From Paragordius varius (taxonomy: Eukaryota; Animalia; Nematomorpha), in NCBI GenBank assembly GCA_964247055.1, contig OZ176053.1:6820001-6884000 (forward strand): 64,000 bases of DNA, read 5' to 3'. The notes below the pieces were generated by a model. That model was not told the DNA's origin and searched no databases. It was given only the letters and a program-made list of their open reading frames with translations. The translations under genes and the position numbers were made by a program. This document shows positions 1 through 62,426 of the stretch, piece by piece; the stretch's first letter is position 1, and each line of letters begins with the position of its first letter.

Positions 1-321
1 ATTATTTAATTTTAATAATGACTAACATTATGTAGGTACTGTAAAATCTTTGTTATATATTGGACAGGAGCAGTAATCCAACTTAAATAAATTATAAAAA
101 TGATTATAAATAGATTATCGACTGCTATATGATACATTATTAAAGTATGATTAAATTAAGCAGGACACCTTCATATTCTAGGAAATCTATTTTAAATAAT
201 ATAATACAGGAATGATATGATATGTTAGTGCGATTGAAAATGTAAGGAAAATATAGAAATTATTTTTTAGGTAAACGAAAGTTTTCATATATCTAAATAG
301 AAAATAAAATAAGTAGCAAAC

Positions 322-1726: not shown

Positions 1727-1764
<38 letters not shown>

Positions 1765-4700
1765 ATAGATTTAAAATTTATATGACTCTGCTGTCCTATC
1801 TATGGTGTTTAGGTTGCAATGTTTTTTGTTACTAAATTGTTTTATTGGCTTTTAAAAAGAGGATGGGGGCGCCATAAGATTTTATGTCCCGGGCGCCGCA
1901 AATGCTCGGTACGCCACTGGTTATTGTTTAAACTTCTCACACTTAAAGAGTATAACCGATTGAATGGGGTTTAGAAAACATATCCCTCGATTAGCCAAAA
2001 AAATTTCAGGGGTATTTAATAAGCAGAGGCGTAGCTAGGGTGAAGAAAGGGGGCTGATGCACCAGACGCCATGGTTAAATGCGGCAAAATTTTAATTTTA
2101 TTTCAAAAAATTAAAAATTTAAAAGTTATTGTTGTAAATAACGCATAAAAAATCACCCATTTATGAGTGGTTATGACCACGGTTATAATTACTTTTTGAA
2201 AATGCAAGGGGTTGCATGGATGGAAAGGGGGGCGCCGGATTCTTGCACCAGGCGCCATAAATGCAAGCTACGCCCTCTGATGCTCTCAAAAAATGGTTAA
2301 GTTTTATAACAATAATGCGGACCATAAAGATTTCTATGCCCATGAATATAAAAATGCACCAAAACTCCAAATTAAATATTAGTCCTCATGGTGTAGCACA
2401 AATAAATTATTCAAGATATTGAAAAATATATAATTTACATGGTATTATTGATTTTAAATTTCATCGTAAAATGTACCCTAAATCTTAATTTGTATTAAAA
2501 GTATGATGTGTATAAATTTTAATCCGTATTTTATGGTTTTACATATATACAAAAAATAGAAACGGAACCAGATTCGGTTCAAGTTTAGCTTTGATTTTTT
2601 ATACCTGGTCAGATTTTTGTTTCCATTTATTTTAGATCAATGGATTTAATTTTACACAAAAATTACGAGATATTCCCATATTTAATACAGAGGGAAGCCT
2701 TAAATCTATTAATTATCTACTACTATCAGTATATTTAAAGTAATATACTTAAATAAACTACATAAAAATAAGGTTACATTGTATTTGAAAAAAATGGCTT
2801 CGAACCGGAACTAAGTTCCACATTTTACAGGAGCCACCCTGTGTCCATTCACCTTTTTTTGCCCGTTTGAAATATCAGAACCGTTTTTGCAGTTAGTGTT
2901 AAATATAACTGGTAAAACACATAAATAAAAGTGTACCACTGATGTCCTTACTAGTTTGTGATACATCACTCATATCAATCTATGTTTATCTATAAAAGTT
3001 GTCTATTTCATATAAATTTCCATCTTCGTTAAAAAAATTGTAACAAATTTATATTATTATCATTATTATTTTTACTTGATAGGCGTTACGGAATCCATAA
3101 TAATCGGCCAATGATTCATCCAAAATGGCAATAGGTTTCTATCCAATTAAAAAAATATGTTTTAAATATTTTAATTACGAAAAAAGATATACACTTCATG
3201 ACCTTTTCATTTTTTTTATCCTCTATGACATTTCGGAATAGTGTTCCAACACAGAGCTTAAAGTAGTTGACAAAGTAATGGTTCGGTTAGAATTTAATAA
3301 TTAAACCTCTTTTAAATAAGTAATATAGAAATTTATTTAGTTTCTTTGATTTAGCTCAAATTTAATTGACATGATTGAATCGAACATATTAAAATAGATA
3401 ATTATCAAAAATCAAAGTTAATTATATACAATTTTCTTCCATAATAATTTAACGAATTTAAAGAAAAACCGAGAAGAAGTTTGAGATGGGGATTTTTTTT
3501 AATTTATTTTGTGAAAAAAACTAAAGATCGTATATTCTAATTTGGCCCAATGCTATAAAAATTTTAAGATATTTAAAATTTACTGGCCCTAGGTATAATT
3601 CCAAAAGGTCATAAAGTGTTAGTCGTTAAACAAATACATACATACCCCTTTAATATTTTGAGTGTAGGGTTTTATAAAACTTTTGAAGCAGTTGACGTGT
3701 CGGTTTACACCTTTATTTGTTGATTCTAAAATAACTAATAGATAAATATATATATTACATAACTTAACCAAATTTAATTTACTAAGTTATATTTAAAATA
3801 TTCATCAAAGGCTTTACTATTATTTACTGCATGTATCATTTCGTGTGAAATCAAAAATCCCAGTTTAGCAAATTTGGACACTTCCGATTCATTTGGATCG
3901 AAAAAATATCCTTGTAGCATCCCCAATCCCAAACCTAAACGAAAAAATATAAAATCATTCATTTCTAATAAAATATAATATGTTTTAATTTTGATCGCAA
4001 ATCAGCAAAAATTATTTAAATAAATGAATAAATTATCTGAAAATATATAAGGTTTTTAATAATTATATCCAATCAATTTTCTTTTGACCAATTAACTTTT
4101 TTAATTAGTCAAAGTCACATGATTCAAATCTATATCATTCGATTTTTGAGACCTGGTAGTATTTTTATTCGCAATCATAGAGGAAAAACTTAAAACGCTT
4201 TATTACCTTATGGGAATTTTTACCCAAACCATTTAAAATTTAAATCTAAATAATTTATATATATTATATACTTTGTGCAAAAAAGAGGGTCTGATTAAAT
4301 GAAAAATTTTTTTTTCATGAGATAGTTTATAACGAGCTAATTCAATTGACAACCTACTTTTTGAAATATTTAGAGAAAATCAAAATTGGGCAAAAAGTGA
4401 AAATTATGGATAATTAAGAATAATTCAAAAAATGATAAAAAATGAGATATTATGATTAATTAATATCTTTAAATAAATAACTTAAAATCATATAAATAGG
4501 GTATTTATAAAATCTCAGATCAAAAGATGGAGTTTTTCTTTTAACAGACTTAATCAAAACTTTTTTATGACACTATCATAAAATAATTTTGTTTAAATTA
4601 TTTAACTCACTATTCAAATCCTAACATTCATATTTTATTAAGTAAAAAAACTTCTACATCAAAATAAAACTAAGAAATATTGTTTTATATTTTTTCATTT

Positions 4701-7700
4701 TTACGTCATCTGGTTTATGAGTGTATGAATAATTTAAACTGTTTTATTTTGGATTATATGAGTAGGAGTTATAAAATATATAATTTATGCATAATAGCAT
4801 TTAAAAGTAGTGGAATATCAAACTATCCGTATAAATTTTTAACAGGTTTGTTTTAACACAAAGTAATATTCGGGATATGTACGGATATTTGGTTCAATTC
4901 TAATACTTTTAAATCCTATTTTGCATAAATTATATACTTTATAACTCCCACTCATGTAAGATTCCAAAATAAAACAGAAATTTTTCAGACACTCAAAAAC
5001 CAGATGGCAAAGAAATGAAAAAATAAAAAACAATATTTCTTAGTTTTATTTTGATATAAAAGTTTTACTGAATAAAATATGAATGTTAGATTTGAATAGT
5101 TAGTTTAACTATTAAATAATTAAAAAAATTATTTTATGATAGTTTCATAAAATTGACTCTTAAGTCTGATAAAAGAAAAACGCCATCTTTTGATCTGAGA
5201 TTTTATAGAAATCCTATTATATGATTTTAAGCTATTTATTTAAAGAAAATATCCCCTAATATGATAATTAATCATTATATCTCAACTTTTATCATTATTT
5301 TTTTAATTATCCATAATTTTCACATTTTGCCCAATTTTAATTTTCTCTGAATATTTCAAAAACTAGGTTGTTAATAAATAAAAAAAATTGCGGGAAATGA
5401 ATTAGCTCGTTATAAGCTATCTCATGAAAAAAAATTGTTTCATTAAAATTTTTTTGTACACAGTGTATATATAATGGAAAAAACTAATTCTTTCCCAAAA
5501 ATAACAAGATTTTAAAATAAATATATTTTACATATGGAAAGACTTATGTGTACCGCTGCCCCTCCGCTTTCTCATACCGAACAGTATTTCCACCACAGAC
5601 TATACTTTTATTAACAATGATTGAATTAGATGCTAAAGTACATTTATTTTACAAAGATAACTTAAAGGGTATTAAAAAGGAAATTTGATATTGGGTAGCC
5701 TACTATGTTAAATTCCCAATACTACTATTGTGCATAAAAGACCGATTTTCTTTTCAGAGATATATCAATCCCACAATAAACCGATTATTTTATTTTATAA
5801 TAGGCATTTGTTAAAATCAAAATTTATCTGTTCTCCATATCATTATGACATGAGCTTAAATCAGTAATTAATATAAATTTTTAACAAGAAAGATTGTTAA
5901 ATGAATATTTATTGTAGACACTGTTATTATTCAAAAAATTAGACTCTATACACTGTGCACAGAAAAATATTTTGATGAAACATATTTTCTGATGTTTATC
6001 CAAACTCTTATAAAGCTTTTGGTTTGGGCCTTAACAGTCATGTTTAAAAATATTTACAGTGTGTGGTAATTGCTCCTTAAAAAATTGAAAAATTTGCGCC
6101 CATCAGGTTAAATAATTCATTTTGGTGAAAGCTAAAAATGTATCATTCTTAATACAATATACTATATTTAATAGCAATATTTTTGTAAAATTTTATTCAG
6201 ATATGCCAAAGACTCAAATATTTGGCCTACCCATTCTCTTAAAAAACGTATAAATGTCGATTCGCGACAATTAATACCTTAGATTATGACATCAAATAAA
6301 TATAATGAAATGTGCACACTTAGAAATTTATAAGCTAAATTTGATTAATCTTATTCTATGGTATAGAGCATTTATTGATCCCTTGGTCTTAAAATTTAAA
6401 TAAATATTTGTAAAATATATTTAATATTTACTATAAATTTGAGGACAATGATATCTTTTAAACCAAAATCTGAGATGGTCATAAAGGTGGGCATTATCGA
6501 ATTATATAAAATGTTTTTATAATATCTTAAAGGGCTACCGTTTTCAGAATGCTCCGAAATTCCATAAAATACGGTTTATCTTTACTAAGAATATAATTTT
6601 CAACAAAGTATGTATTTTTTCAAATTATGCTGTCATAATCTAGCATATAAAAAAATCTTATCTCAAATCTCGACATTTTTGTTCATTTAAAAAAAATTGA
6701 AGGTTTCGGATCCCACATCTGAAAATTTTTGATACTAAATATATTAAGTGGAATCAAGCCTATTAGCTTCACAAAAAAATAACAATATATAGGCAATTTT
6801 TGCCATATTCTGATATGTAGGGATTTCTCATCCGTATGGATGACCTGATACATTTATCTAACAGTTATATTTTATTAAAATATTTTTAATACCCACCGAT
6901 TTTGTGTACTAAGTAGATTCTTTTAATATAAAATATGTATGAAATTTCTAAAATCTATTTAAGCAAATACCGATTTTGTTTGTATTGTTTTCGTAAAATG
7001 CACCATATAAGTCGTTTGTATCAACTGTTGGTATTCTAAGGATTAAGAGAGTGAGAAATATTTAAAAAATCATTTACAAATATTAAAAGTAAAATAGCAC
7101 AATAAATATTTAAATTTTACAGAAAAAGTAAACACACAAAAACAAATTTTTTTCAGAAAATCGCTGTAGTCTTTGAAACCCGAGTTTTTTTAGGTTTAAC
7201 CCGTTTTGTGAAATGCAATGTAGAAATAGAGAAGCAAATTAATATTACAATTAATAATATTTTTATAATTAAAATTAAATAATTTATGTAAAAATATTAG
7301 GGTTAAAAAAAGTATTGTTATCTTATGAAAAAATTTCCCTATGTTATTCCGTTCTGTCTGTATTTTTTACGCTTTAGATCCTTAATTGAAAATGTTTAAT
7401 ATATTGCAAGTTGAAAACAAGACTTTTGAAGGTAAATGGATCTTACTACGAATCAGCCAAAACTGTAATCAAAATAAAAATATATTATCAACTCTATCAA
7501 TTTAACGAAAAATGCATTTTTCAAGCCAAATAAAGAAATATCACAAAAGGGTCCTGCCTGTTTTTAGAAAGAAGTCTATACCCATTAATATTTTTTTATA
7601 AGGAACGTTCAAAACAACTACCGGCCTTTCATCAAATCAAACTTCCAAAAATCATAAATTAGTTCCAATACTGTACATAAAATTTGTTTACATTATTATA

Positions 7701-8126
7701 TTTAAGCTTGTACTCGTATAGGCACTACTTCTGAATTTTGATCCCATAATGATAATTAGGTATAAAATGATAAAAAAAAATGTTTCACCTATCAATATGT
7801 TATTATAATAAATACCTTACATTTTAGTATAATTATAAAAACTTACGATTTTCTCAATATTTGGATGTTGTAATCGTAGTCATTTATTCGAAGGTTAATC
7901 TAGTATAATTATAATTGGAATGCTATTAATAAATGTTTACTATCAATATATACTCTTTCATATGATCTTAAATACGATTAGAACATATAAAATTGAAATT
8001 ATTACGAAATACTTTATCCTTTTAGTAATTTAACAAATATTTTGAAAATGATTCTGGCTAAGCGAGCGTTTTGGGCATAAATCTCATATTTAATAAAAAA
8101 TAATTGGCTGTAATTAATTAAATTCA

Positions 8127-8163
<37 letters not shown>

Positions 8164-11100
8164 CCATATATTGAGTTAGTTATTAATAACTTAATATAAT
8201 ATACTATTAATAACATTTTTTTTGCCGTTTACTAGCAAATCACTTGTCAAAGAGGACTTATAGAATGATAAAAAATGGTTATGCCGATGTTCATTTTTTG
8301 ATAATTTAGGAAGCATGAATACTTCAAACAAACAGTATATATTTTTAACTCTCATCAAATGTTACAATAAAAAATGTCAAAATGTATATGATATATTTGA
8401 AAAATATTTAACCTTTTCGTATTTCATCCTTTTGGCCTTTTGATTATGTACCGAGAATTTTGGAAACGTTTCAAGTTTTATAGAATTGAGCTGTGTAAAA
8501 TTTAAGGTTAGAAATGTTTATTATTCATTATCCAGTAAAAAAGCAATAAAAAGATTCTATTTTTCCGTCGGAAAAAAATACATTTTGATGGCACATTATT
8601 AAAAATATTAATATAATGCCATAACCTATGACTACTGTTTGATATATATATATATATAATATATTGTGAAAACCAATCTTAATAGAATGTTTCAAATTTA
8701 ATTGAAATAAAAATATTATCTATAAATATATTTTGTTTGAAAAACCCAAATTTATGAATACGCTGTTTTCAAAATCCAAAAAATGAGTAATTCATTTAGA
8801 AAAATTTAGAAACGTAAAATGTAAATCGGGGTACTCTGTTAGTATAACTAATAATAGAGTAAACGCTAAAGTTTTTTTACTGACCTATACCTCCGGATAG
8901 ATAAACAAAGGAGCGGTGGAAATATTAAAAGCTTTAAAATTGGTTTTGTTTTACTATTGAATCAATCAAAGTAAATTATTCAAACGATTTTATATCTTAC
9001 CTGTTGGTAGAGCGAAAAAATATTAATTGATTTCCATAAGTATAGTATATCATTTATAAAATTATAAGGTTCTAATATAAAGCTCATTAAATAATATTTA
9101 TAACATTTTAAATAATTCTCTTTTCAAAATCCATCAAAACTTCAAAGACATTTATTTTTAACATTATCACTGAAGTTATTCAGTTTATATCATTCTTATT
9201 AATATTATCATCATAAATATGACAATTAGGGGTACTTAATGTTTAAAAAGCTATTTAAAATATTTGGTATTTTTCATTTTTTGCATTCATTTCTCTCATA
9301 TGACGCTATACAGTTCTCCCAAGTGTACAAACGGATCATTTTACAAATTATGAGTGATGTTTTTTGGGATCACTACGACATTGATAAGCTTTGCCAAAAT
9401 CGGAATCGTTTTATTTTAATTAAAATGAAGGCTAATAAAGGTATCTACCGAATTGCTATGTTTAATTCGTTAATGTGACCAAATTCAAATTTTTAAAATG
9501 AGCTACAGTAATTTATCACAGGCTACCTTTCTTCAAATTACTGTAAATAAAAATCATATCCATATATAAGTTTAAAATGGTATCAAAACTATAAATGATC
9601 ATTAAAATATATGAAAAGTTTTTGAAATCCTTGAAACCACGTTCCTTTCAAAAACATTTCATAAGCGATATCCAATTGTTTGGTTTTAAAACGGTTTCAA
9701 GAAGATTCACATTTCAGTTCCAGTTTAAAGCTATGAATGACTGTTTAAATGATGACTTGTGAGAAAAATACCATTATAAGATATTTAATGTTTTTAGAAT
9801 TTGTTATTTTTTGTGTGGACTTTATAAGAATATGTTTGCTTAAAATTTGTATTAAAGTTAGGGTTGTATTAACAACCATGAGAGCTTAGATTAAAATAAA
9901 TCAATTAATATCGCAATCGAAAAATATGTGTAAACCTTGTTTAATATTTTTCCTTGAATGGACGGAGGCAAATGGATACTTTCATTTATCGTGTGCATGA
10001 CCTCCCTTCTTAAAGCGTTAAATAATTGATTGACCTAAGTCCAATTAAAAGATATTAGTTAAGTACTGTGTGATAATTAACAAAGGTAAACTATAATATA
10101 TGTAATTAACAGATACGATAGTTTAAATCAGGGTTGCTCCCTAAAAAATTTTAAAGGGCCAAAAAAATATTTTTATTGTCTCAAAGGCCATGATACCGAT
10201 AAAATTTTCATAGCTGTTTATGCACATATTTTCCAAATAGGTACATCAAAAATTAAAAAAGGGCCCCGCACGCGTCCCGTAGGCCGCAGTTTAAAAATCG
10301 CTGGTCAAAACAATAGTAAAAAATGTGTGTATTACTTGAACTATTTGATTCTTTGAATTAAGGACTTGATAGGCTATATTTATAAAGATATCTGGAAAAT
10401 GGTTTTCTGTTACATAATTACAATAATGTGGATGTTCGCTAATTTCAGTACATGCGTTAATGTATGGGCAAATCAAATCTTGATAGTATTGAGAGTTTTT
10501 TGTTTGGACATACCGTGTATTAAGTATCAAATGATTGTAAATAAGGTAGAGGTACATAGTTCTAATAACAATTAATCAATATGCAAATATGCCGGTCTAA
10601 CTGCTTATGATTATGGAGTTAATACAAACCATAATGAGAAATATATTTTGTGACTAAAGAAATTTTATATAACCATATGCAAATTAAGATAGAGCGATCT
10701 TATATTATTAATGTAAGAGTTTCGAATACAGAAAATTTATGAATAATTATTAATTCAAAATCTGACTTATTATTTTAAATTTTTTACCACTACTTTTTTT
10801 ATATCCGCGATAATTATTACATTGTGAAATATAACAAGTTATTTTGATAAGCCTAGAGCACGGTCATGAAGGTGCATTTATAACCGCTGAGAAAAACCCT
10901 ATATTTTATTATATTAGTAGATGGTTTTAGATTCCGTCGAAACTGACTTTGTATATTATGTAATATGCTCATATACTTAAATATAGTTAAATTAAAAAAT
11001 TTTAAGAATGCATATGTGTTGATATGCTTTAGACTTTTTTAAATTCAACAAACACTATATTTAAAATATATGTTACAATCGAAAATAGCATAAGACTAAA

Positions 11101-12935
11101 CCTTATTCCAGACCAGCTACTTAAATATTTATTCTGAAGCAAATGATGGATCTTGGTTAGATATCTGATGGGAACTTCAATAGATGAAATATTGAAACGG
11201 TTTATATCATCCAAGTATGACTGAAACTAAAAAATTATAAAATAAGAAAATTAGAGGAAACAATATATTACAAATTTCATGGTTAATATTAATTATCCCG
11301 TTTTTCTTATAATATTATCAAACCAGAGGAAAATCTCGGATAAAACTGAGGGCTTTTTTGTAATTTTTCGATTCATCATATACGGTGGCCTTTCTAATCT
11401 AAATGATTACAACAATTATGAGAATGATATCTAAAATTGAACAAAATGATGACCAAGTCAATATTAAACGCGATTGGGCAATTATTTTTTATAACACTTA
11501 ATGTGCTTTTTTATTTTAAATTTTTTTCATCTATTCGATGAGTAATGTGCATTTTATAATAACTTTTTGACCATATATTATGTATGGTTATTATGGGGAT
11601 ATAACAAATTACCTAAATTTAAATAATTAAATTCAGGGAGGTACGACCCGCTTTTTTGGGTATGGAAAAGTGATCTAAAAATGTTTAAAAAAATAAAAAT
11701 TTGTTTTCAATCAATTTACGATTATTTAGAAAATATGCCAGCATCTAAAATTTGCAAAAAAATTAAACCCAAAAATTATCAAAGCAGCCGCGAAGATATT
11801 TGTGCTAAACACCCCCTGAGCTTAGTTTAAGGTGACCTTGGAAAGTTGAAAGAAAAATATATTGAACTTATTAGCGATAGGGGGAGAAATTCTTAGGGAT
11901 GTTTTAACAAATTAAACTTATCCATCTCATTTATTGCGTAATACTATTATCCCTTTACACTTTTGAAAATGGATACCATAGAATGTTCCCGTTCCAAATC
12001 TATTATTGATTTTGCGTCGATTGAGGTGAAGCCCAATGGTGATAGAAGACTGGTGAGATATGCTTTGTAATTCTTCATAATGGTAGAATCGGCAAAAAAT
12101 TTGGGCTCAGACATATGAAGTTTTGGGTATTTTAAAGATAATGTCCCAATCAATGTTTCAAATTGGCCTATAAGTTTTTCAACAATAACCTCCTTAACAT
12201 TTGTATTTATAATCAGATTATTATTATTATTATTGTGTCTTTTTTGTTGACCATTAAGCCACATATCAAGATTAAGAGCCAGATTGAAGGAATTTGTATT
12301 ATTTTTGGAGGAACGGGTGAAAACAGGTTTAGTTTCCGGGTATAACTCAAATGATTTAAAAATATCTGCATAATTTATAGGTCGTCTAGTTTGCCATTTT
12401 CGAGTTTGACATGATCGATAAAAAGTATGCATCAATTTTTCAAAGGGGTTCCGGTCATTTTCATGTTTGTTAACCAAATAATCTATCATTTGTGGTAATA
12501 TCATATAAAACTTAATGAATGATATGATATGCATTTAAATATAACTAAGATAAGAGATTTTTATCCCAAATTCGTATAAAAATATTACCAAAAACATCCT
12601 TGTTAATACTCTTAGCTATTTTAGTAAATTGATCTCCGCTTTTTTCACCAGGAGAAAAGTTGTAATCGAAATCTTTGCAACTATAATCATGAAAATTTAC
12701 ACATGGGTTGGCGATTGTTCCCAATTGTGATGGTAATGACAAAAGACCTGAAAAATATAAAAAAATTGCAAATTAGATTGGTGTGATAAATGTAAGATAG
12801 ATAGATATATTATTTATTATATAATATAAAAACCTTTAAAAAATTACCTGGTATTTTTTCAACAAATGCCAAATAGTATATAATGGAGAAAATGTAATTA
12901 TAACGAATAAATCTATTCAAGATTGAATCGGTCAT
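322..12935 (-). CDS. M13 (neprilysin-family) metallopeptidase gene 1; 15 of 16 exons in window, last exon off the left edge
   Basis: Exons (minus strand, GT-AG, phases compatible): 12848-12935, 12589-12747, 11977-12482, 11324-11398, 11102-11220, 10336-10561, 9936-10034, 8413-8490, 7847-7899, 6971-7035, 3818-3934, 3646-3734, 3076-3138, 462-539, 322-398. Motifs: NPCVNFHDYSC (cf. DPCxDFYxYAC), FYRSC, GAFY..NTNKI, GMLQGYFF..GFLISHEMIH (HExxH), LDESLADYYG (cf. GENIAD), DDHLQGSQR (cf. DxHSPxxxR). Confidence 0.85.
691..1919 (+). mobile_element. Internally deleted hAT-type DNA transposon in gene 1 intron 13
   Basis: TIRs TAGGGGCGTACCGAG / CTCGGTACGCCACTG. 8-bp TSD GTTATTCT (683-690) / GTTATTGT (1920-1927). 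The paralogous site near 29440 is empty. There is a remnant MPKLSGANRKR at 1447, resembling the SGAxKRK start of hAT transposases. Confidence 0.85.
1730..1762. repeat. (TA)n microsatellite
   Basis: Direct reading. Others lie at ~8130-8159, ~14047-14084, ~17813-17830 and ~23712-23736. Confidence 0.95.
2024..2279. mobile_element. Small MITE with CAGAGGCGTAG termini, shared with gene 2 (29094-29335)
   Basis: Terminal inverted repeats are present in both arms at the equivalent position. No clear TSD. Confidence 0.6.
4271..5465. mobile_element. Almost fully palindromic ~1.2-kb TIR element (family X, CACTGTG termini, TA-rich target)
   Basis: Two ~560-bp inverted arms meet near 4835-4870, and the right end is GTACACAGTG followed by TA. 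It is absent from the paralogous TA-rich site near 26420-26440. Confidence 0.8.
10129..10303. mobile_element. Small hAT/Charlie-like MITE in intron 6 (mirror copy 21569-21743)
   Basis: CAGGGTTG..GGCCGCAGTTTAAAAATCGCTG ends. Flanks GTTTAAAT / GTCAAAAC match at only 5 of 8 positions. Confidence 0.5.
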
Positions 12936-14044
12936 TTATTTTAATATTTAATGATAAAAAGAAATTTTAAATTACTTTTTAAATTTGAATCAATGTTTTT
13001 ATAGTAAAATACCTGAGGTATTCTAAGAAAAGGTCTTATGATTTTTTAAAAAATAATTATGTGTAGTTAAATTTTCGTTCATTCGAAATCAGTTAAACCT
13101 TTTACGATTAGCTAGGGCATTTTAATGTAAAAAATTATAGTTTATTTAACTAAAACAATTTTGCCTTTAGGCAAAATGGATTTCCAAAAAAAATCATACT
13201 TTTTCTTAAATGATATAATTTTTATTATGTAGAAAGATGCCATAAGGGTAAGGAAAACGAGTTATTTATGATTTAAAAAATGGTGTCATAAATATAAAAC
13301 TCTGATGAAATTAAATTTTTGGTTTTTTAGATTGAATTCGAATACATTCCCACATGATAAATATTCATAAAAACAACCTATATCTTATGTTTATTTTATT
13401 CAAGAATCAAAAAATTTTGGTTTTTAATAGCACGCTCCCCTTTCAATCATAGAAAATTTAAACATAAAAAGTGTGTTTGACAAAAAGCCAAATATATTTT
13501 TATGAGAACTGTATATGTACAGTTTTAACAATATATGCTATAATTATATGTGAAGTAAGCATACATATAAAAATCCAGTATTCCTGTCGGTATCTTCAAT
13601 TTAAAATTTGAATGAAATTTCAAATCAACTTATAAAATTAGACTTCAATGATTTCAACGAATAATGTTTTTTTATAAAGTTGGTCAATCAATATATTTTC
13701 AGTTTCAAGAAGAAAAATTAAGGCTTATTTTTTTCACGTTTATTAAGCAAAATCTAATTTTTTAAATATATATCAAGTACAAATGGTTGCAATATATGAA
13801 AAAAATAATAAGTAACGTAGGACAGCAAATATTACAAAAAAGAAAACTTATCAAAATGGTAAATATTTAGTAAGCTACTTTAAATTAACCTTTTCTCGAT
13901 TAAAAATAATTTGATTTTCGTTTCCAACCGATTCCACATTTTAGTTCCTGAATTTTTATAGTCATAATTAAAGATATAAAATTAATAATTAAAAATTTGT
14001 TTTATAGCCTATTAAATTTAATATATATTTGTTAAAAAATTATG

Positions 14045-14090
<46 letters not shown>

Positions 14091-14468
14091 TTGGAATATT
14101 TAACTTCTCACCCCTTATGTTTTATTGAAAAGAAAATCGGTTTGTTAACTATCCTATAAGCTATATAGTGTTATTGGTTCTTTGACAAAGTAGACAAAAA
14201 GATCTAAAATCGTTCAAAACATAATAGATATTTGATGAAAGCAGAATAAAAACTAAATATTAATAAACAAATGTTTTTATTTTGCTGCTCTTTATTTAAA
14301 ACTAATTATTTAATGAAATATAATTACATAAAATTATTTCAAAAAGAATTTTATATTTTGGTAATCATAACTTTTATTTAGCTTTAAGTTGGCTGTCATA
14401 CTCATTAGACATATTAAATTCAATAATAAGATAATTTCAATAAATGAACATAAATTTTATATATGCAG

Positions 14469-15660
14469 ATTAGAAACGCAAGCGTGTATGCCAAATCAAA
14501 AGATTACCAAAATGTAAATGACTTATTGAACGATTTTCAAAAGTAAACCATCTGTTGCAAAACAAAAATTACAATAGGATCTGTAATAATGTTTTTATAT
14601 TTGTTTTTGCTTTACCTGCAATTAAGCTTTTATTTCTAATATTTTAATTATCCCTATAATCAGAATTACTCACTAAAAACTAAAAATGGGTAGACATATT
14701 TTGATTTAAAATTATTTTCAATTTTAAACGTTAATGTTAACAAATTAAAAGTAATGTTTTATATACAGTAAAATAATATAGACTTCCTATAAGGCGACAT
14801 TTTTTTGTTTTTTGAATATATCCTATTGGGTAAATAAGTAAAAATTTGGCAACACACCCAATTATATATTTTACAATTATAATAGGTAATAATAATTTTA
14901 ATTTTCACTGTATTTGACACTATAACGTTGTACATCTACCTTATATACAATCATTTGCTCTCAAATTTACATTATATTCACACAAACACTTCCATGTATT
15001 TCCAAGACTTGGTTTGCCCATACATTAATGGCTGTTTTGAAAGGAGTGAGGAGCCTAATTACTGTTATTTAAATACGCAATCGCGTTTTCCCGAAGTCTA
15101 CAATGATATTGCTTATAAAATTTTAGCCAGGTCTAATGATGAGTTACGAGAGGTAAAATATAACCAATTGATGTAGTCTATATAATTTTAGGTAAATATT
15201 ACATATTCAAAATAAATTAGAGTTGATTTTACCGGTCTAATGGTGTAACTTTTTAGTTATTTATGGGCCTACCGGATCAGTATTATGGAGATGTTTTAAC
15301 TACCTAAAAAACAAATCCAATCCTTGCTTTTAAATGTCAAAAATCAATATATTAATTTTTTTCTATTGATTTTAACATTATACCATTATTATTATACACG
15401 TGATAAATATAGGTTTAAAACTTTGGCTTGGTTTTTATTTTAAAAACAATCATGGTCAGTTTGTTTATAACACACAACCCTATTCCGTTTGGTATTGTAG
15501 CCTTTTTGAATGTTCTACGCATGAAATAAATTATATAGCTTTTTTATTTATTATCGAATAGATTGATAACATATTTGATCTAATACGAAAGGAAACCATC
15601 TACACAATTATAAAAAGTGACAATTTTCCACAAACTATCAAAGCTTGAATAGTGGAAAAG
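14469..15660 (+). pseudogene. M13 paralog relic (exons 4, 6, 7) in the spacer of the inverted duplication
   Basis: The exon-4 homolog 14469-14542 (IRNASVYAKSKDYQNV..) is 74 nt against 75 in the paralogs. The exon-6 homolog at about 14924-15152 has AT where the paralog acceptor AG lies. The exon-7 homolog 15562-15660 (IDNIFDLIRKETIYTII..KA*IVEK) has an in-frame TGA. Exons 1-3, 5 and 8-16 were not found. Confidence 0.8.
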
Positions 15661-15924
15661 GTAGCCTAATTTGTATTGTTTTAATATATTGTTTTGCAAT
15701 AAACACAAAGAAAAATTAACACTTAAACACAAATCATTTTCATGTGTCCTTCCAATACAAATGGGGCTTGTTTAATTTTAATATTTTACAAAGTGTGTAA
15801 TATATTGAATCGATTGTAAAAATTTCTACCTATATTACATTAATTGATGTACCAAAATTTAAAAAAATAACCCAAATTCTATTTTTAGCTTTATACTAAC
15901 AAGTAGATGGCGTTTTCCGCTAAA

Positions 15925-16556
15925 AAATTTGTGATTTCCTAAGTCTGTTTTGTGACAAATTGATATTTGTATTGTGATTTGTACGGATTTGGTTGATATT
16001 CCACTAATTTCAAATCCTATTTTGCATATATTATATACTTTATAATTCCTACTCATGTAAAAATCCAAAATAAAACAGTATAAATTTTTTATATTATCAT
16101 AAACCAGATGACAAACAATGCAAAAATAAAAAACAATATTTTTGGATTTATTTTGATATATAAGTATTTTTTACTTATGAATGTTAAGATTATAATAGTG
16201 AGTTTAGGTAGTATATAAAAAAATTATTTTAATATAGTTTCATATAATTTTTTTGTTTTTTAATTGTGATAAAAGAAAAACACCATCTTTTGAGCTATAA
16301 TTTTATAGAAACCCTAACTATATGATTTTATTTATATATTGAAAATATATCTTAAAATGATAATATACCATAACAATTATATCATTATAATAATCCTTAA
16401 TTTTCACTTTTTCGATTTAGATTTTCTCTCAATATTTCAAAAACTAGGTTGTCAACAAATAATAGTTTTTGCGGCAAATGAATTCACTGGTCATAAGCTA
16501 TCTCATGAAAAAAAGATTTTCGTTAAATTGAAATCACCCTCTTTTTTGTACACAGT
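15925..16556. mobile_element. Half copy (right arm) of family X element
   Basis: Similar to 4880-5465 and 17220-17813. It ends GTACACAGT followed by (TA)n. Confidence 0.7.
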
Positions 16557-16565
16557 ATATATATA

Positions 16566-17813
16566 CACTGTGCGTAAAAAAAATTTTAACGAAAAATTTT
16601 TTTTTTATGAGATAGCTTATGACCAGCGTATTCATTTGGCGCAAAATATTTATTTGTTAACAACCTAGTTTTTGAAATACTGAGAGAAAATCAAAATCGG
16701 GCAAAAAGTGAAAATTTGGAAAATTCAAAAAATAATGATAAAATCTGAAATATTATCGTTTATTATCATTGTAGGAGATATTTTCAATATATAAATAGCC
16801 TAAAATTATATAGTTGGGATTTCTATAAAATTTCAGGTCAAAAGATGGCGTTTTTCTTTTATTACACTTAAAAGAGAAAAAAATTTAATTAAACTATATT
16901 AAAATAATTTTTTTAATTATTTATTACCTAAACTCACTATTAAAATCTTAACATTCATATTTTATTCAGTCAAATAAACTTCTATATCAAAATAAAACCA
17001 AAAATATTGTTTTATAATTTTGCATTTTTTTGTCATCTTGTTTATGAGTGTATAAAAAATTTTATACTGGTTTATTTTGGATTCTTACATGAGTGGGAAT
17101 TACTAAGTGTATAATTAATGTATAGGATTAAAAATTAGTGGAATATCAACCAACAATCCGTACAAATCCCAATACAAATATTTATTTGTCATAAAACAGA
17201 CTTGTTACCGGAAATTGTAAGGATTGTTGGTTGATATTCCACTACTTTTAAATCCTATTTTGCATAAATTATAAACTTAATAATTCATAATCATGTAAAA
17301 ATTTAAAATAAAACAGTATAAAGTTTTAATATATTCATAAACCAGATGACAAAAAAAATGCAAAAATAAAAAACAAAATTTTGTGTTTTATTAATGTAGA
17401 GGTTTATTTTCCTGAATAAAATATGAATGTTAAGATTTTAATAGTGAGTTTAGGTAGTAAAAATTAAAAATTACTTTAATATAGTTTCATTAATTTTTTT
17501 TTGTCTTGTAAGTGTGATAAAAGAAAAACGCCATCTTTTGACCTGAAATTATATAGAAACCCTAACTATATGATTTGCTATTTATATATTGAAAATATCT
17601 AAAATGATAATAAACGATAATATTTCAGTTATCATTATTTTTTGAATTATCCAAATTTTCACTTTTTGCCCGATTTTGATTTTCTATGAATATTTCAAAA
17701 ACTAGGTTGTAAACAAATAAATATTTTGCGACAAATGAATACGCTGGTCATAAGCTATCTCATGAAAAAAAAATTTTCGTTAAATCAAAATGACCCTCTT
17801 TTTTGTACACAGT
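16566..17813. mobile_element. Complete family X palindromic element
   Basis: Starts CACTGTGC after (TA)n and ends GTACACAGT before (TA)n. The ~600-bp inverted arms meet near 17190-17220. Confidence 0.85.
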
Positions 17814-18936
17814 ATATATATATATATATACTCTTCATAATTTTTCAACAAATATATATTAAATTTAATAGGCTATAAAACAAATTTTCAATTATTGATT
17901 TTATATCTTTAATTTTTATAAAAATTCAGGATCTGAGAATCTGTTGGAAACGAAAATCAGATGGTTTTTATTTGAGAAAAAGTTTAAGTTAATGTAGCTT
18001 ACTAAATTATTACCATTTTGATAAGCTTTTTTCTTTTTTGTAATATTTGCTTGTCCTATGTTAATTTTTTTTTCATATATTGCAACCATTTGTACTTGAT
18101 ATATATTTAAAAAATTAGATTTTGCTTAATAAACGTGAAAAAAATAAGCCTTAATTTTTCTTCTTGAAACTGAAAATATATTGATTGACCAACTTGATAA
18201 AAAAACATTATTCGTTGAAATCATTGAAGTCTAATTTTATAAGTTGATTTGAAATTTCATTCAAATTTTAAATTGAAGATACCGACAGGAATACTGGATT
18301 TTTATATGTATGCTTACTTCACATATAATTATAGCATATATTGTTAAAACTGTACATATACAGTTCTCATAAAAATATATTTGGCTTTTTGTCAAACACA
18401 CTTTTTATGTTTAAATTTTCTATGATTGAAAGGGGAGCGTGCTATTAAAAACCAAAATTTTTTGATTCTTGAATAAAATAAACATAAGATATAGGTTGTT
18501 TTTATGAATATTTATCATGTGGGAATGTATTCGAATTCAATCTAAAAAACCAAAAATTTAATTTCATCAGAGTTTTATATTTATGACACCATTTTTTAAA
18601 TCATAAATAACTCGTTTTCCTTACCCTTATGGCATCTTTCTACATAATAAAAATTATATCATTTAAGAAAAAGTATGATTTTTTTTGGAAATCCATTTTG
18701 CCTAAAGGCAAAATTGTTTTAGTTAAATAAACTATAATTTTTTACATTAAAATGCCCTAGCTAATCGTAAAAGGTTTAACTGATTTCGAATGAACGAAAA
18801 TTTAACTACACATAATTATTTTTTAAAAAATCATAAGACCTTTTCTTAGAATACCTTAGGTATTTTACTATAAAAACATTGATTCAAATTTAAAAAGTAA
18901 TTTAAAATTTCTTTTTATCATTAAATATTAAAATAA

Positions 18937-21900
18937 ATGACCGATTCAATCTTGAATAGATTTATTCGTTATAATTACATTTTCTCCATTATATACTATT
19001 TGGCATTTGTTGAAAAAATACCAGGTAATTTTTTAAAGGTTTTTATATTATATAATAAATAATATATCTATCTATCTTACATTTATCACACCAATCTAAT
19101 TTGCAATTTTTTTATATTTTTCAGGTCTTTTGTCATTACCATCACAATTGGGAACAATCGCCAACCCATGTGTAAATTTTCATGATTATAGTTGCAAAGA
19201 TTTCGATTACAACTTTTCTCCTGGTGAAAAAAGCGGAGATCAATTTACTAAAATAGCTAAGAGTATTAACAAGGATGTTTTTGGTAATATTTTTATACGA
19301 ATTTGGGATAAAAATCTCTTATCTTAGTTATATTTAAATGCATATCATATCATTCATTAAGTTTTATATGATATTACCACAAATGATAGATTATTTGGTT
19401 AACAAACATGAAAATGACCGGAACCCCTTTGAAAAATTGATGCATACTTTTTATCGATCATGTCAAACTCGAAAATGGCAAACTAGACGACCTATAAATT
19501 ATGCAGATATTTTTAAATCATTTGAGTTATACCCGGAAACTAAACCTGTTTTCACCCGTTCCTCCAAAAATAATACAAATTCCTTCAATCTGGCTCTTAA
19601 TCTTGATATGTGGCTTAATGGTCAACAAAAAAGACACAATAATAATAATAATAATCTGATTATAAATACAAATGTTAAGGAGGTTATTGTTGAAAAACTT
19701 ATAGGCCAATTTGAAACATTGATTGGGACATTATCTTTAAAATACCCAAAACTTCATATGTCTGAGCCCAAATTTTTTGCCGATTCTACCATTATGAAGA
19801 ATTACAAAGCATATCTCACCAGTCTTCTATCACCATTGGGCTTCACCTCAATCGACGCAAAATCAATAATAGATTTGGAACGGGAACATTCTATGGTATC
19901 CATTTTCAAAAGTGTAAAGGGATAATAGTATTACGCAATAAATGAGATGGATAAGTTTAATTTGTTAAAACATCCCTAAGAATTTCTCCCCCTATCGCTA
20001 ATAAGTTCAATATATTTTTCTTTCAACTTTCCAAGGTCACCTTAAACTAAGCTCAGGGGGTGTTTAGCACAAATATCTTCGCGGCTGCTTTGATAATTTT
20101 TGGGTTTAATTTTTTTGCAAATTTTAGATGCTGGCATATTTTCTAAATAATCGTAAATTGATTGAAAACAAATTTTTATTTTTTTAAACATTTTTAGATC
20201 ACTTTTCCATACCCAAAAAAGCGGGTCGTACCTCCCTGAATTTAATTATTTATATTTAGGTAATTTGTTATATCCCCATAATAACCATACATAATATATG
20301 GTCAAAAAGTTATTATAAAATGCACATTACTCATCGAATAGATGAAAAAAATTTAAAATAAAAAAGCACATTAAGTGTTATAAAAAATAATTGCCCAATC
20401 GCGTTTAATATTGACTTGGTCATCATTTTGTTCAATTTTAGATATCATTCTCATAATTGTTGTAATCTTTTAGATTAGAAAGGCCACCGTATATGATGAA
20501 TCGAAAAATTACAAAAAAGCCCTCAGTTTTATCCGAGATTTTCCTCTGGTTTGATAATATTATAAGAAAAACGGGATAATTAATATTAACCATGAAATTT
20601 GTAATATATTGTTTCCTCTAATTTTCTTATTTTATAATTTTTTAGTTTCAGTCATACTTGGATGATATAAACCGTTTCAATATTTCATCTATTGAAGTTC
20701 CCATCAGATATCTAACCAAGATCCATCATTTGCTTCAGAATAAATATTTAAGTAGCTGGTCTGGAATAAGGTTTAGTCTTATGCTATTTTCGATTGTAAC
20801 ATATATTTTAAATATAGTGTTTGTTGAATTTAAAAAAGTCTAAAGCATATCAACACATATGCATTCTTAAAATTTTTTAATTTAACTATATTTAAGTATA
20901 TGAGCATATTACATAATATACAAAGTCAGTTTCGACGGAATCTAAAACCATCTACTAATATAATAAAATATAGGGTTTTTCTCAGCGGTTATAAATGCAC
21001 CTTCATGACCGTGCTCTAGGCTTATCAAAATAACTTGTTATATTTCACAATGTAATAATTATCGCGGATATAAAAAAAGTAGTGGTAAAAAATTTAAAAT
21101 AATAAGTCAGATTTTGAATTAATAATTATTCATAAATTTTCTGTATTCGAAACTCTTACATTAATAATATAAGATCGCTCTATCTTAATTTGCATATGGT
21201 TATATAAAATTTCTTTAGTCACAAAATATATTTCTCATTATGGTTTGTATTAACTCCATAATCATAAGCAGTTAGACCGGCATATTTGCATATTGATTAA
21301 TTGTTATTAGAACTATGTACCTCTACCTTATTTACAATCATTTGATACTTAATACACGGTATGTCCAAACAAAAAACTCTCAATACTATCAAGATTTGAT
21401 TTGCCCATACATTAACGCATGTACTGAAATTAGCGAACATCCACATTATTGTAATTATGTAACAGAAAACCATTTTCCAGATATCTTTATAAATATAGCC
21501 TATCAAGTCCTTAATTCAAAGAATCAAATAGTTCAAGTAATACACACATTTTTTACTATTGTTTTGACCAGCGATTTTTAAACTGCGGCCTACGGGACGC
21601 GTGCGGGGCCCTTTTTTAATTTTTGATGTACCTATTTGGAAAATATGTGCATAAACAGCTATGAAAATTTTATCGGTATCATGGCCTTTGAGACAATAAA
21701 AATATTTTTTTGGCCCTTTAAAATTTTTTAGGGAGCAACCCTGATTTAAACTATCGTATCTGTTAATTACATATATTATAGTTTACCTTTGTTAATTATC
21801 ACACAGTACTTAACTAATATCTTTTAATTGGACTTAGGTCAATCAATTATTTAACGCTTTAAGAAGGGAGGTCATGCACACGATAAATGAAAGTATCCAT

Positions 21901-24900
21901 TTGCCTCCGTCCATTCAAGGAAAAATATTAAACAAGGTTTACACATATTTTTCGATTGCGATATTAATTGATTTATTTTAATCTAAGCTCTCATGGTTGT
22001 TAATACAACCCTAACTTTAATACAAATTTTAAGCAAACATATTCTTATAAAGTCCACACAAAAAATAACAAATTCTAAAAACATTAAATATCTTATAATG
22101 GTATTTTTCTCACAAGTCATCATTTAAACAGTCATTCATAGCTTTAAACTGGAACTGAAATGTGAATCTTCTTGAAACCGTTTTAAAACCAAACAATTGG
22201 ATATCGCTTATGAAATGTTTTTGAAAGGAACGTGGTTTCAAGGATTTCAAAAACTTTTCATATATTTTAATGATCATTTATAGTTTTGATACCATTTTAA
22301 ACTTATATATGGATATGATTTTTATTTACAGTAATTTGAAGAAAGGTAGCCTGTGATAAATTACTGTAGCTCATTTTAAAAATTTGAATTTGGTCACATT
22401 AACGAATTAAACATAGCAATTCGGTAGATACCTTTATTAGCCTTCATTTTAATTAAAATAAAACGATTCCGATTTTGGCAAAGCTTATCAATGTCGTAGT
22501 GATCCCAAAAAACATCACTCATAATTTGTAAAATGATCCGTTTGTACACTTGGGAGAACTGTATAGCGTCATATGAGAGAAATGAATGCAAAAAATGAAA
22601 AATACCAAATATTTTAAATAGCTTTTTAAACATTAAGTACCCCTAATTGTCATATTTATGATGATAATATTAATAAGAATGATATAAACTGAATAACTTC
22701 AGTGATAATGTTAAAAATAAATGTCTTTGAAGTTTTGATGGATTTTGAAAAGAGAATTATTTAAAATGTTATAAATATTATTTAATGAGCTTTATATTAG
22801 AACCTTATAATTTTATAAATGATATACTATACTTATGGAAATCAATTAATATTTTTTCGCTCTACCAACAGGTAAGATATAAAATCGTTTGAATAATTTA
22901 CTTTGATTGATTCAATAGTAAAACAAAACCAATTTTAAAGCTTTTAATATTTCCACCGCTCCTTTGTTTATCTATCCGGAGGTATAGGTCAGTAAAAAAA
23001 CTTTAGCGTTTACTCTATTATTAGTTATACTAACAGAGTACCCCGATTTACATTTTACGTTTCTAAATTTTTCTAAATGAATTACTCATTTTTTGGATTT
23101 TGAAAACAGCGTATTCATAAATTTGGGTTTTTCAAACAAAATATATTTATAGATAATATTTTTATTTCAATTAAATTTGAAACATTCTATTAAGATTGGT
23201 TTTCACAATATATTATATATATATATATATCAAACAGTAGTCATAGGTTATGGCATTATATTAATATTTTTAATAATGTGCCATCAAAATGTATTTTTTT
23301 CCGACGGAAAAATAGAATCTTTTTATTGCTTTTTTACTGGATAATGAATAATAAACATTTCTAACCTTAAATTTTACACAGCTCAATTCTATAAAACTTG
23401 AAACGTTTCCAAAATTCTCGGTACATAATCAAAAGGCCAAAAGGATGAAATACGAAAAGGTTAAATATTTTTCAAATATATCATATACATTTTGACATTT
23501 TTTATTGTAACATTTGATGAGAGTTAAAAATATATACTGTTTGTTTGAAGTATTCATGCTTCCTAAATTATCAAAAAATGAACATCGGCATAACCATTTT
23601 TTATCATTCTATAAGTCCTCTTTGACAAGTGATTTGCTAGTAAACGGCAAAAAAAATGTTATTAATAGTATATTATATTAAGTTATTAATAACTAACTCA
23701 ATATATGGTCTAATATATATATATATATATATATATTGGTGAATTTAATTAATTACAGCCAATTATTTTTTATTAAATATGAGATTTATGCCCAAAACGC
23801 TCGCTTAGCCAGAATCATTTTCAAAATATTTGTTAAATTACTAAAAGGATAAAGTATTTCGTAATAATTTCAATTTTATATGTTCTAATCGTATTTAAGA
23901 TCATATGAAAGAGTATATATTGATAGTAAACATTTATTAATAGCATTCCAATTATAATTATACTAGATTAACCTTCGAATAAATGACTACGATTACAACA
24001 TCCAAATATTGAGAAAATCGTAAGTTTTTATAATTATACTAAAATGTAAGGTATTTATTATAATAACATATTGATAGGTGAAACATTTTTTTTTATCATT
24101 TTATACCTAATTATCATTATGGGATCAAAATTCAGAAGTAGTGCCTATACGAGTACAAGCTTAAATATAATAATGTAAACAAATTTTATGTACAGTATTG
24201 GAACTAATTTATGATTTTTGGAAGTTTGATTTGATGAAAGGCCGGTAGTTGTTTTGAACGTTCCTTATAAAAAAATATTAATGGGTATAGACTTCTTTCT
24301 AAAAACAGGCAGGACCCTTTTGTGATATTTCTTTATTTGGCTTGAAAAATGCATTTTTCGTTAAATTGATAGAGTTGATAATATATTTTTATATTAATTA
24401 CAGTTTTGCCTATCGATTCCTATAAGATTCATATACCTTCAAAAGTCTTGTTTTCAACTTGCAATATATTAAATAAGTTTAATTTAAGAATCTAAAACGT
24501 GAAAATATACAGACAAAACGGAAAAACATAGAGAATTTTTTTTATAAGACAACAATACTTTTTTTAATTATTTAATTTTAATTATAAAAATATTATTAAT
24601 TGTAATACTAATTTGCTTCTCTATTTCATACATTACATTTCACAAAATGGTTTATACATAAAAAACTCGGGTTTAGAAGACTACAGAGATTTCCTGAAAA
24701 AAATTTGTCTTTGCGTGTTTACATTTCCTGTATAATTTCAATATTTATTGTGCTATTTTGCTTTTAATATTTGTAAATGATTGTTTAAATATTTCTCACT
24801 CTCTTAATCCTTAGGATACCAACAGTTGATACGAACGACTTATGTAGTGCATTTTACGAACGCAACACAAACAAAATCGGTATTTGCTTAAATAGATTTT

Positions 24901-62344: not shown

Positions 62345-62426
62345 TAATTAATTTTAAAATATATTTAGCTAAATGATATTTTCTATAACGATATATGTAC
62401 TAAGCATTTATATAATATTTTTTTAG

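What the first reader, a model, noticed from the sequence alone, without database searches (positions are those of the whole stretch)
7480..24394. Conversion-like homogenised tract inside an old palindrome, covering promoter to exon 9 only
Seen: ~7480-13800 and ~18072-24394 are near-identical. By eye I found substitutions at 11404/20468, 11619/20253, 13015/18857 and 13676/18196, plus a (TA)15 versus (TA)12 difference. Clearly diverged homology continues inward (13800-14045 vs 17836-18070) and outward for over 7 kb, with arm-specific transposon insertions. The outer edge falls in intron 9, which separates the M13 N-terminal domain from the catalytic domain. Inference: a recent arm-to-arm gene conversion or template switch within an older inverted duplication, as known for sex-chromosome palindromes. 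The result is two enzymes with an identical ~467-aa N-half and different catalytic halves.
Basis: partly seen in the sequence, partly recalled or inferred. Interest (0 to 1): 0.8.

Follow-up and report, generated by a model that had tools for sequence, protein, structure and literature searches.

The report
Gene-conversion patch between mirrored peptidase genes
Two head-to-head copies of a fast-evolving M13 (neprilysin-like) peptidase gene in a very AT-rich worm genome are about 7% diverged everywhere except one sharply bounded 6.3-kb block, a textbook copy-paste repair (gene conversion) that makes their promoters and first 484 amino acids identical.

Summary
That is K2P 0.0006. The homologous flanks are diverged on both sides, at 0.054-0.079 outward and 0.094 inward, with many indels and arm-specific insertions. 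The step occurs within a few bases and shows no gradient.

I built a 16-exon, 656-aa GT-AG model of the right-hand gene. It is M13-like, with HEMMH, GESLAD and DHxxxPxR motifs. The tract runs from 869 bp upstream of the ATG to 108 nt into the 3.1-kb intron before the HExxH exon. By my count this is intron 10, not 9. The identical part is therefore 484 aa, not about 467. All five arm differences are non-coding.

The visible catalytic halves (exons 11-15) are intact in both copies. They differ at 17 of 141 residues (3 synonymous, 18 non-synonymous changes).

Contigs from an independent sample fork exactly at the outer edge.

Best reading: a long, recent interparalog gene conversion (or template switch) on an old inverted duplication, possibly recurrent. 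This is a clean example of a well-known process. No raw long reads were available, so an assembly artefact is unlikely but not excluded.

The parts
7474..13805 (-). Left copy of the homogenised tract. It holds 869 bp of upstream DNA, exons 1-10 of the left M13-like gene (E1 12935-12848 to E10 7625-7582) and the first ~108 nt of intron 10.
   Evidence: 4 substitutions and one 6-bp TA indel against the right copy; all ten exons are identical.
18068..24392 (+). Right copy of the homogenised tract. It holds upstream DNA, exons 1-10 of the right M13-like gene and the first 108 nt of intron 10. Exons: E1 18937-19024, E2 19125-19283, E3 19390-19895, E4 20474-20548, E5 20646-20770, E6 21311-21536, E7 21838-21936, E8 23382-23459, E9 23967-24019, E10 24241-24284.
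   Evidence: All exons are GT-AG with matching phases. Exons 1-9 are supported by a paralogue at 45505-58440 that has the same splice positions. E10 is inferred from motif and phase only.
24393..30861 (+). Diverged outer part of the right arm: the rest of intron 10 and the catalytic-half exons. These are E11 27412-27528 (HEMMH), E12 27621-27709, E13 28226-28288 (GESLAD), E14 29582-29659, E15 29731-29807 (DHLQGPQR) and E16 30768-30861 (stop).
   Evidence: (PF01431 26.1 bits, cut-off 24.5).
1..7473 (-). Diverged outer part of the left arm: intron 10 with an arm-specific 1.2-kb foldback element (4209-5442), E11 3934-3818 (HEMIH), E12 3734-3646, E13 3138-3076 (DESLAD), an L-only 1.2-kb block (692-1916), E14 539-462 and E15 398-322. 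Exon 16 lies before the window start.
   Evidence: splice sites are conserved and there are no stops; 21 nt and 17 aa differences from the right copy.
13806..14067 (.). Inner diverged homology of the left arm. It pairs with 17813-18067. A 4-bp indel sits exactly at the tract edge.
   Evidence: K2P 0.094, 7 gap events in 262 bp.
14068..17812 (.). Spacer between the arms. It has (AT)n runs at both ends and nested copies of the ~1.25-kb foldback repeat family.

Best explanation
An old inverted (head-to-head) duplication of an M13-like peptidase gene diverged to about 7% substitutions plus many indels and transposon insertions. Much later, a double-strand break or stalled fork in one arm was repaired using the other arm as template. 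This replaced a continuous ~6.3-kb stretch, from 869 bp upstream of the ATG to 108 nt into intron 10, with the partner's sequence. Four point mutations and one microsatellite slip have accumulated since. That is about 1% of the flank divergence.

The result is a gene pair with identical upstream DNA and an identical 484-aa N-terminal part. That part includes the signal-anchor, the M13 N-domain and the NAYY-like motif. The catalytic halves still differ at about 12% of residues.

Shown here: the tract, its edges, the flank divergence and the exon content. Inferred: the repair mechanism, that it was one event, and that both genes are expressed.

The now-identical block may have become a self-sustaining conversion domain with recurrent events. 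This is hinted at by contigs from other samples but is not established.
For: - Sharp step from K2P 0.0006 to 0.054-0.094 on both sides, with no gradient. The 170 bp just outside the outer edge are already about 15% different.
- Flank substitution divergence is uniform at about 7% from the spacer to the window start. This fits an old, evenly diverged background with a young patch.
- Introns and upstream DNA are as identical as exons, so purifying selection cannot explain the identity.
- The five arm differences include a microsatellite length difference, so the assembler resolved two separate copies.
- Non-coding GC in the tract is not raised: 0.240 against 0.255-0.267 in the flanks. This gives no sign of long-term biased conversion and so favours a recent event.
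- Independent short-read contigs: in run X3 a 361-bp contig with one mismatch ends exactly at 24392. A de Bruijn unitig shared by two arms that first differ at 24393 would end there. At 24409 X3 shows both the R letter and the L letter at about half depth each.
- At 22 or more tract sites both window arms share a letter that differs from all or nearly all contigs of four other runs. Substitutions separating lineages are therefore present on both arms.
Against: - No raw long reads could be laid. Only Logan contigs were available and the one read-laying run is used, so the structure is not verified by molecules spanning an arm.
- In runs X1 and X3 a second, ~88-90%-identical version of the tract also exists, at lower contig depth. 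This could be another paralogue elsewhere; a third 3' fragment at 62342-63436 shows that more copies exist. It could instead be an unconverted arm or allele in those samples. That would not contradict conversion, but it would change its dating.
- A single 6.3-kb tract across templates about 7-14% different is long for interparalog conversion. In C. elegans paralogues the reported mean is 117 bp and the range 12-2958 bp (PMC3966223).
Confidence: 0.75

Rival explanations
1. Long-standing concerted evolution. The 6.3-kb core has been kept identical by frequent arm-to-arm conversion ever since the duplication. The flanks escaped early, behind indels or transposon insertions that block heteroduplex extension, and diverged.
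For: - The same outer edge seems present in an independent sample: a contig ends at 24392 in X3.
- Lineage-separating substitutions are shared by both arms.
- A 4-bp indel sits exactly at the inner edge.
- This is the behaviour known for sex-chromosome palindromes (PMC8327919, PMC8600007).
Against: - There is no divergence gradient next to the edges. Immediate flanks are as diverged as distal ones, so the domain did not shrink gradually.
- The inner flank next to the spacer is also fully diverged.
- There is no GC enrichment in the tract.
- No large insertion lies at either edge. The nearest arm-specific element is 2 kb away.
Confidence: 0.15
2. Assembly or polishing artefact. One arm truly carries a diverged version of the tract, and the assembler or polisher overwrote it with the other arm's sequence.
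For: - Diverged (~88-90%) contigs lying on the tract exist in other samples.
- No spanning reads were examined.
- Near-identical inverted repeats are a known weak spot of assemblers (general knowledge).
Against: - Polishing cannot erase ~7% substitutions plus dense indels over 6.3 kb and stop within a base or two at both ends.
- The two copies retain 4 substitutions outside homopolymers and a different microsatellite length.
- An independent short-read contig set forks at the same base, and both flank versions are present there.
- A foldback-read artefact would give a spacer-less perfect palindrome, not a patch inside diverged arms.
Confidence: 0.08

Closest known systems
Interlocus (ectopic) gene conversion between adjacent inverted paralogues, e.g. 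C. elegans hsp16 and hsp70 inverted pairs (reviewed in PMC3966223); from my own knowledge, also Drosophila Hsp70Aa/Ab and the human fetal globin pair.
   Same: A block of identity, including introns and 5' flanking DNA, is embedded in diverged but colinear paralogous sequence. It is detected as a run of identity far longer than the flank divergence allows. It yields mosaic paralogues.
   Different: The tract here is 6.3 kb, about twice the longest reported for C. elegans paralogues (2958 bp, PMC3966223). It crosses templates that are otherwise ~7% substituted and indel-rich. It covers the promoter and N-terminal half and spares the catalytic half.
Arm-to-arm gene conversion in large sex-chromosome palindromes (human and ape Y, primate and mouse X; PMC8600007, PMC8327919, 10.1101/800185).
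   Same: Inverted arms around a unique spacer, genes inside the arms, and within-genome arm identity of 99.9% in the converted part. There is a hint that the arms are more alike within a genome than the same locus is between lineages.
   Different: Only 6.3 kb of arms at least 14 kb long is homogenised; the rest is ~88% identical. Sex linkage and germline expression are unknown. The arms are gene-sized rather than tens to hundreds of kb.
M13 zinc metallopeptidases (neprilysin/ECE family; Pfam PF05649 + PF01431).
   Same: HExxH, a downstream ExxxD-type glutamate (GESLAD/DESLAD), a DHxxxPxR motif, a C-terminal Cys-rich tail and an N-terminal hydrophobic anchor. All three weak PDB matches are M13 enzymes.
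   Different: The family is extremely diverged. The 195-aa exon 3 finds nothing among 1.84 billion representative proteins and only a sub-threshold Pfam N-domain match. The protein is short (656 aa) and lacks the usual C-terminal CxxW.

Membership tests
Interlocus gene conversion tract | A run of identity significantly longer than expected from the divergence of the flanking paralogous sequence (GENECONV/Sawyer criterion). | tested here: met
   the longest identical run is 3924 bp against a permutation maximum of 681 (10,000 permutations). The binomial probability is below 1e-130.
Interlocus gene conversion tract | Homologous, colinear but diverged sequence on both sides of the tract. This means replacement, not insertion of a new duplicate. 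| tested here: met
   inner flank K2P 0.094, outer flank 0.054-0.079, same order and orientation.
Interlocus gene conversion tract | Identity extends equally over non-coding DNA, so selection is not the cause. | tested here: met
   4872 non-coding bases of the tract carry only the 4 substitutions and 1 indel.
Interlocus gene conversion tract | Phylogenetic discordance: paralogues group within a species in the tract, but by orthology in the flanks. | not testable with these tools
   No orthologous locus from another species could be fetched. Contigs of other samples give only hints.
Sex-chromosome-type palindrome maintained by arm-to-arm conversion | Arms above 99% identical over (nearly) their whole length. 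| tested here: not met
   only 6.3 kb of at least 14 kb is 99.9% identical. The rest is 71-95% per 200-bp window.
Sex-chromosome-type palindrome maintained by arm-to-arm conversion | Arm-to-arm divergence lower than between-lineage divergence of the same locus (concerted evolution). | tested here: inconclusive
   at least 22 sites in 4.2 kb (0.5% or more) where both window arms differ from contigs of four other runs, against 0.06% between arms. Copy number and arm assignment in those runs are unknown.
Sex-chromosome-type palindrome maintained by arm-to-arm conversion | Sex linkage and germline-biased expression of arm genes. | not testable with these tools
   No chromosome assignment. No RNA run holds the stretch.
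Peptidase family M13 | HExxH zinc-binding motif in a Peptidase_M13 (PF01431) domain. | tested here: met
   HEMMH (R) and HEMIH (L). Exon 11 alone scores 26.1 bits against the cut-off of 24.5.: the best PDB matches are all M13.
Peptidase family M13 | Third zinc ligand Glu in an ExxxD motif downstream of HExxH. | tested here: met
   GESLAD (R) and DESLAD (L and the third paralogue).
Peptidase family M13 | Peptidase_M13_N (PF05649) domain. | tested here: inconclusive
   exon 3 matches profile positions 51-196 at E=0.0035, 17.2 bits (cut-off 32). Other N-half exons give no hit. The joined protein was not searched, by rule.

The most novel reading that the evidence does not exclude
The block is not a one-off repair scar. 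It is a maintained 'constant region': recurrent conversion keeps the promoter and N-terminal domain of the pair identical, with an edge fixed in the intron before the HExxH exon. Meanwhile the catalytic halves are free, or driven, to diversify (18 non-synonymous against 3 synonymous changes, spread over both copies). This would give a parasite a modular constant/variable peptidase pair. A variant of this reading is that the conversion is still polymorphic in the population, and the ~89% contigs in other samples are the unconverted arm.
Probability: 0.12. Interest if true: 0.55.

Novelty: new member of a known kind. Interest (0 to 1): 0.3.

Why it matters
The locus is a very clean natural example of a long (6.3 kb) conversion tract with base-level edges on a well-diverged background, in a phylum with almost no recombination data. 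Earlier notes suggest the phylum is Nematomorpha (horsehair worms).

It gives a concrete locus for three uses:
- measuring tract length, edge positions and frequency across individuals;
- asking whether homeologous (~7% diverged) templates are tolerated in this lineage;
- warning annotators that the two genes cannot be told apart by reads or peptides from their first 484 codons.

The excess of amino-acid changes in the unconverted catalytic halves fits other notes that M13-like genes evolve fast in this genome. With only 21 changes this is a lead, not a result.

Tried and rejected
1. Reference-guided gene modelling failed. phmmer of the 195-aa exon 3 against 1.84 billion representatives gave 0 hits. 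Pfam found only 2 of 13 exon pieces. I therefore built the model from splice phases plus the in-window paralogue at 45505-58440.
2. Low-stringency tblastn between paralogues was mostly noise from AT-rich codons. Only colinear hits were kept.
3. Two very deep short segments in the laid contigs (21653-21729 and 24494-24534) looked like possible conserved exons. They read as short dispersed repeats with no open frame and were rejected as exons.
4. Contig depth as copy number. Ratios of near-identical to diverged contigs were about 2:1 in X3 and about 4:1 in X1. The tool states that depth per contig is not a copy number, so I do not rest on it.
5. The idea that run X1 lacks the R-type flank was rejected. 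The L-like letters seen in all contigs are best explained as private changes of the window's R arm.
6. GC-biased conversion signature: none found.
7. The search of earlier findings by sequence came back blank.
Full report
**The observation**

A search for inverted repeats over the whole window finds two perfect-scoring arm pairs. These are 8136-13811/18061-23736 and 7455-8153/23713-24411. Many shorter pairs at 75-99% identity continue outward to 1-179 and inward to 13966-14067/17813-17914.

A gapped global alignment of 5300-14400 against the reverse complement of 17500-26600 shows 200-column windows at 100% or 99.5% identity from about 7577 to 13776. Outside that range the windows are at 71-95%.

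The complete list of differences puts the tract at L 7474-13805 and R 24392-18068.

The edges are abrupt.
- The first outer difference is at 7473/24393. The next 170 bp hold 27 differing columns.
- The inner edge is a 4-bp indel at 13806-13809, followed by dense substitutions.

**Is it more than chance, and how old is it?**

| Region | Sites | Substitutions | K2P |
|---|---|---|---|
| Tract | 6326 | 4 | 0.0006 |
| Outer flank 5443-7473 | 1967 | 148 (plus 36 gap events) | 0.079 |
| Outer flank 6000-7473 | 1441 | 75 | 0.054 |
| Inner flank 13806-14067 | 249 | 22 | 0.094 |

The more distal blocks, 1917-4208/29443-27142 and 11-691/30107-29432, have about 7% mismatches, which is 87.8% and 88.6% identity including gaps.

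The background is therefore uniformly about 7% substituted, and the tract is about 100-fold younger. The probability of 4 or fewer mismatches in 6326 sites is below 1e-130 even at p=0.05. The longest identical run is 3924 bp, against a maximum of 681 in 10,000 permutations.

There is no gradient of divergence approaching either edge.

**Arm-specific content**

- L 4209-5442 is a 1.2-kb self-complementary foldback element. Its relatives fill the spacer at 15970-17828.
- L 692-1916 is a further L-only block.
- R 26444-27141 is R-only.
- The spacer (14068-17812) begins and ends in (AT)n runs.

The 'old palindrome with arm-specific insertions' is confirmed. The arms are at least 14 kb long. The left arm is cut by the window start.

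**The genes**

The genome is about 26% G+C. Earlier notes of this scan call it a probable horsehair worm (not tested here).

The right copy lies on the + strand and the left copy on the - strand, head to head.

Reference-guided modelling was not possible. Exon 3 (195 aa) found nothing among 1.84 billion representative proteins. Pfam recognised only two pieces:
- exon 3 as Peptidase_M13_N positions 51-196, at E=0.0035, below the cut-off;
- the HExxH exon as Peptidase_M13 positions 10-50, at 26.1 bits against a cut-off of 24.5.

The three weak PDB matches of that exon are all M13 enzymes.

I therefore used a third, ~50%-identical paralogue on the - strand at 45505-58440. It shares splice positions and phases with the right copy.

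The resulting right-hand model has 16 GT-AG exons and 656 codons with no internal stop. It contains these features:
- an N-terminal hydrophobic anchor (E1);
- NPCxNF (E2);
- LNVPY at residue 475-479, the NAYY-equivalent (E10);
- HEMMH at 515 (E11);
- GESLAD at 560 (E13);
- DHLQGPQR (E15/16);
- a Cys-containing C-terminus.

Exon 10 (24241-24284) has no paralogue support. It rests on motif spacing and on phase-1 compatibility with exon 11, so it is inferred.

The joined protein was not sent to any search or folding tool.

**Where the tract lies in the gene**

The inner edge (18068) is 869 bp upstream of the ATG (18937). The outer edge (24392) is 108 nt into intron 10 (24285-27411), the 3.1-kb intron that precedes the HExxH exon.

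Even if exon 10 is discounted, the edge lies between the last paralogue-supported exon of the N-half (E9, ending at 24019) and the HExxH exon.

Exons 1-10 encode 484 aa rather than about 467.

The intron falls about 10 residues inside Pfam's catalytic-domain model, just after the NAYY-like motif. This is near the domain border but not exactly at it.

All five arm differences are non-coding:
- 20468 is 6 nt before the exon 4 acceptor;
- 20253 is in intron 3;
- 18857 is 80 nt upstream of the ATG;
- 18196 is 741 nt upstream of the ATG;
- the TA repeat is in intron 8.

**The unconverted halves**

Left-arm exons 11-15 keep their lengths, splice sites and frames. The two copies differ at 21 of 424 nt and 17 of 141 residues.

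By Nei-Gojobori counting there are 3 synonymous and 18 non-synonymous differences. This gives dS 0.035, dN 0.056 and a ratio of about 1.6.

With so few changes this only shows the absence of strong purifying selection. It does not demonstrate positive selection.

I compared the differing residues by eye with the third paralogue. Derived states fall on both copies: the right copy at 523, 525, 527 and 560, and the left copy at 518, 534, 548 and 558. Neither copy looks like the decaying one.

The zinc ligands are kept in both. The left copy's exon 16 is outside the window.

**Independent sequence data**

No raw reads were available. Eight runs hold part of the stretch, all as Logan contigs and none on record as RNA.

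I laid four runs on 20200-26200 at 80% likeness or more. Four observations followed.

1. In run X3 a 361-bp contig with one mismatch covers 24032-24392 and ends exactly at the tract's last base. A unitig shared by two arms that first differ at 24393 must end there.
2. At 24409 X3 shows both the R letter and the L letter at about half depth each. Both flank versions therefore exist in that sample.
3. At 22 listed tract sites both window arms carry a letter that differs from all or nearly all contigs of the four runs. Differences separating lineages (0.5% or more) are thus shared by the arms, whereas the arms differ by 0.06%.
4. In X1 and X3 a second version, about 88-90% identical, also lies on the tract at lower contig depth.

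Points 1 to 3 support the structure and hint at conversion after lineage splitting, possibly recurrent within a fixed domain.

Point 4 is unresolved. It may be another paralogue, since a third copy of the 3' region at 62342-63436 is 87.6% identical to R 29494-30575. Other M13-like families are also noted in this genome. Alternatively it may be an unconverted arm or allele.

The tool warns that contig depth is not copy number, so I draw no copy-number conclusion.

**Mechanism and rivals**

Non-reciprocal replacement with homologous edges on both sides is gene conversion by definition. Whether it arose by double-strand-gap repair, long-tract synthesis-dependent annealing, or a replication template switch between arms cannot be told from the product.

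The single-recent-event reading is favoured by the lack of any divergence gradient, the fully diverged inner flank, and the lack of GC enrichment in the tract (0.240 against 0.255-0.267).

The maintained-domain reading is favoured by the shared edge in X3 and by lineage-specific changes present on both arms. The two readings are compatible if one long event created a block that now converts easily.

An assembly artefact is unlikely, for four reasons:
- the copies keep five differences;
- the edges are base-sharp;
- polishing cannot erase dense indels over 6.3 kb;
- an independent contig set forks at the same base.

Spanning reads were not seen, however.

**Comparison with what is known**

Conversion between adjacent inverted paralogues, including introns and flanks, is long known, for example in the C. 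elegans hsp16 and hsp70 pairs reviewed in PMC3966223.

Tracts there average 117 bp and reach 2958 bp. Yeast tracts can exceed 12 kb (same review). A 6.3-kb tract over ~7%-diverged templates is therefore long for an ecdysozoan, but not a new kind of event.

Sex-chromosome palindromes (PMC8600007, PMC8327919, 10.1101/800185) share the geometry and the 99.9% identity. They are homogenised along whole arms, which is not the case here.

**Verdict**

It is a new member of a known kind and of modest interest.

Noticed in passing
window 45505-58440 (- strand): A third M13-like paralogue, about 50% identical in protein to the palindrome genes. It has the same splice positions and phases for exons 1-9 and 11-16. 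No counterpart of exon 10 (the NAYY-like motif) was found, so it may be diverged or defective there.
   Followed up: partly
window 62342-63436 (+ strand): A third copy of the gene's 3' region (exons 14-15 and the DNA after them). It is 87.6% identical to R 29494-30575 and also matches L 1-691 inverted. It stops before exon 16 and has no upstream exons next to it, so it is probably a fragment of a further duplication.
   Followed up: partly
window 4209-5442; 15970-17828: A ~1.2-kb self-complementary (foldback) repeat family. One copy is specific to the left arm's intron 10, and two or three nested copies make up most of the palindrome's spacer.
   Followed up: partly
window 21653-21729 and 24494-24534: Short segments where contigs of other samples pile up 3- to 10-fold deeper than their neighbours and diverge on both sides. 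They look like small dispersed repeats inside introns 6 and 10. The second is a 21-nt unit repeated twice.
   Followed up: partly
window 42560-43126 and ~18 kb before the window start: Earlier notes place PDCD6/ALG-2-like genes on both sides of the palindrome. The old inverted duplication may therefore be much larger than the M13 genes, with arms over 25 kb. I did not check orientation or similarity.
   Followed up: no
window 19338-19925: The largest exon (195 aa, N-domain) has no phmmer hit at E<=0.001 among 1.84 billion representative proteins. This points to a very fast-evolving, lineage-restricted M13-like family.
   Followed up: yes
window 33658-34063 / 35512-35935: A separate inverted repeat pair of about 200-370 bp at 88-93% identity, about 1.4 kb apart and downstream of the right gene. 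It was not examined.
   Followed up: no
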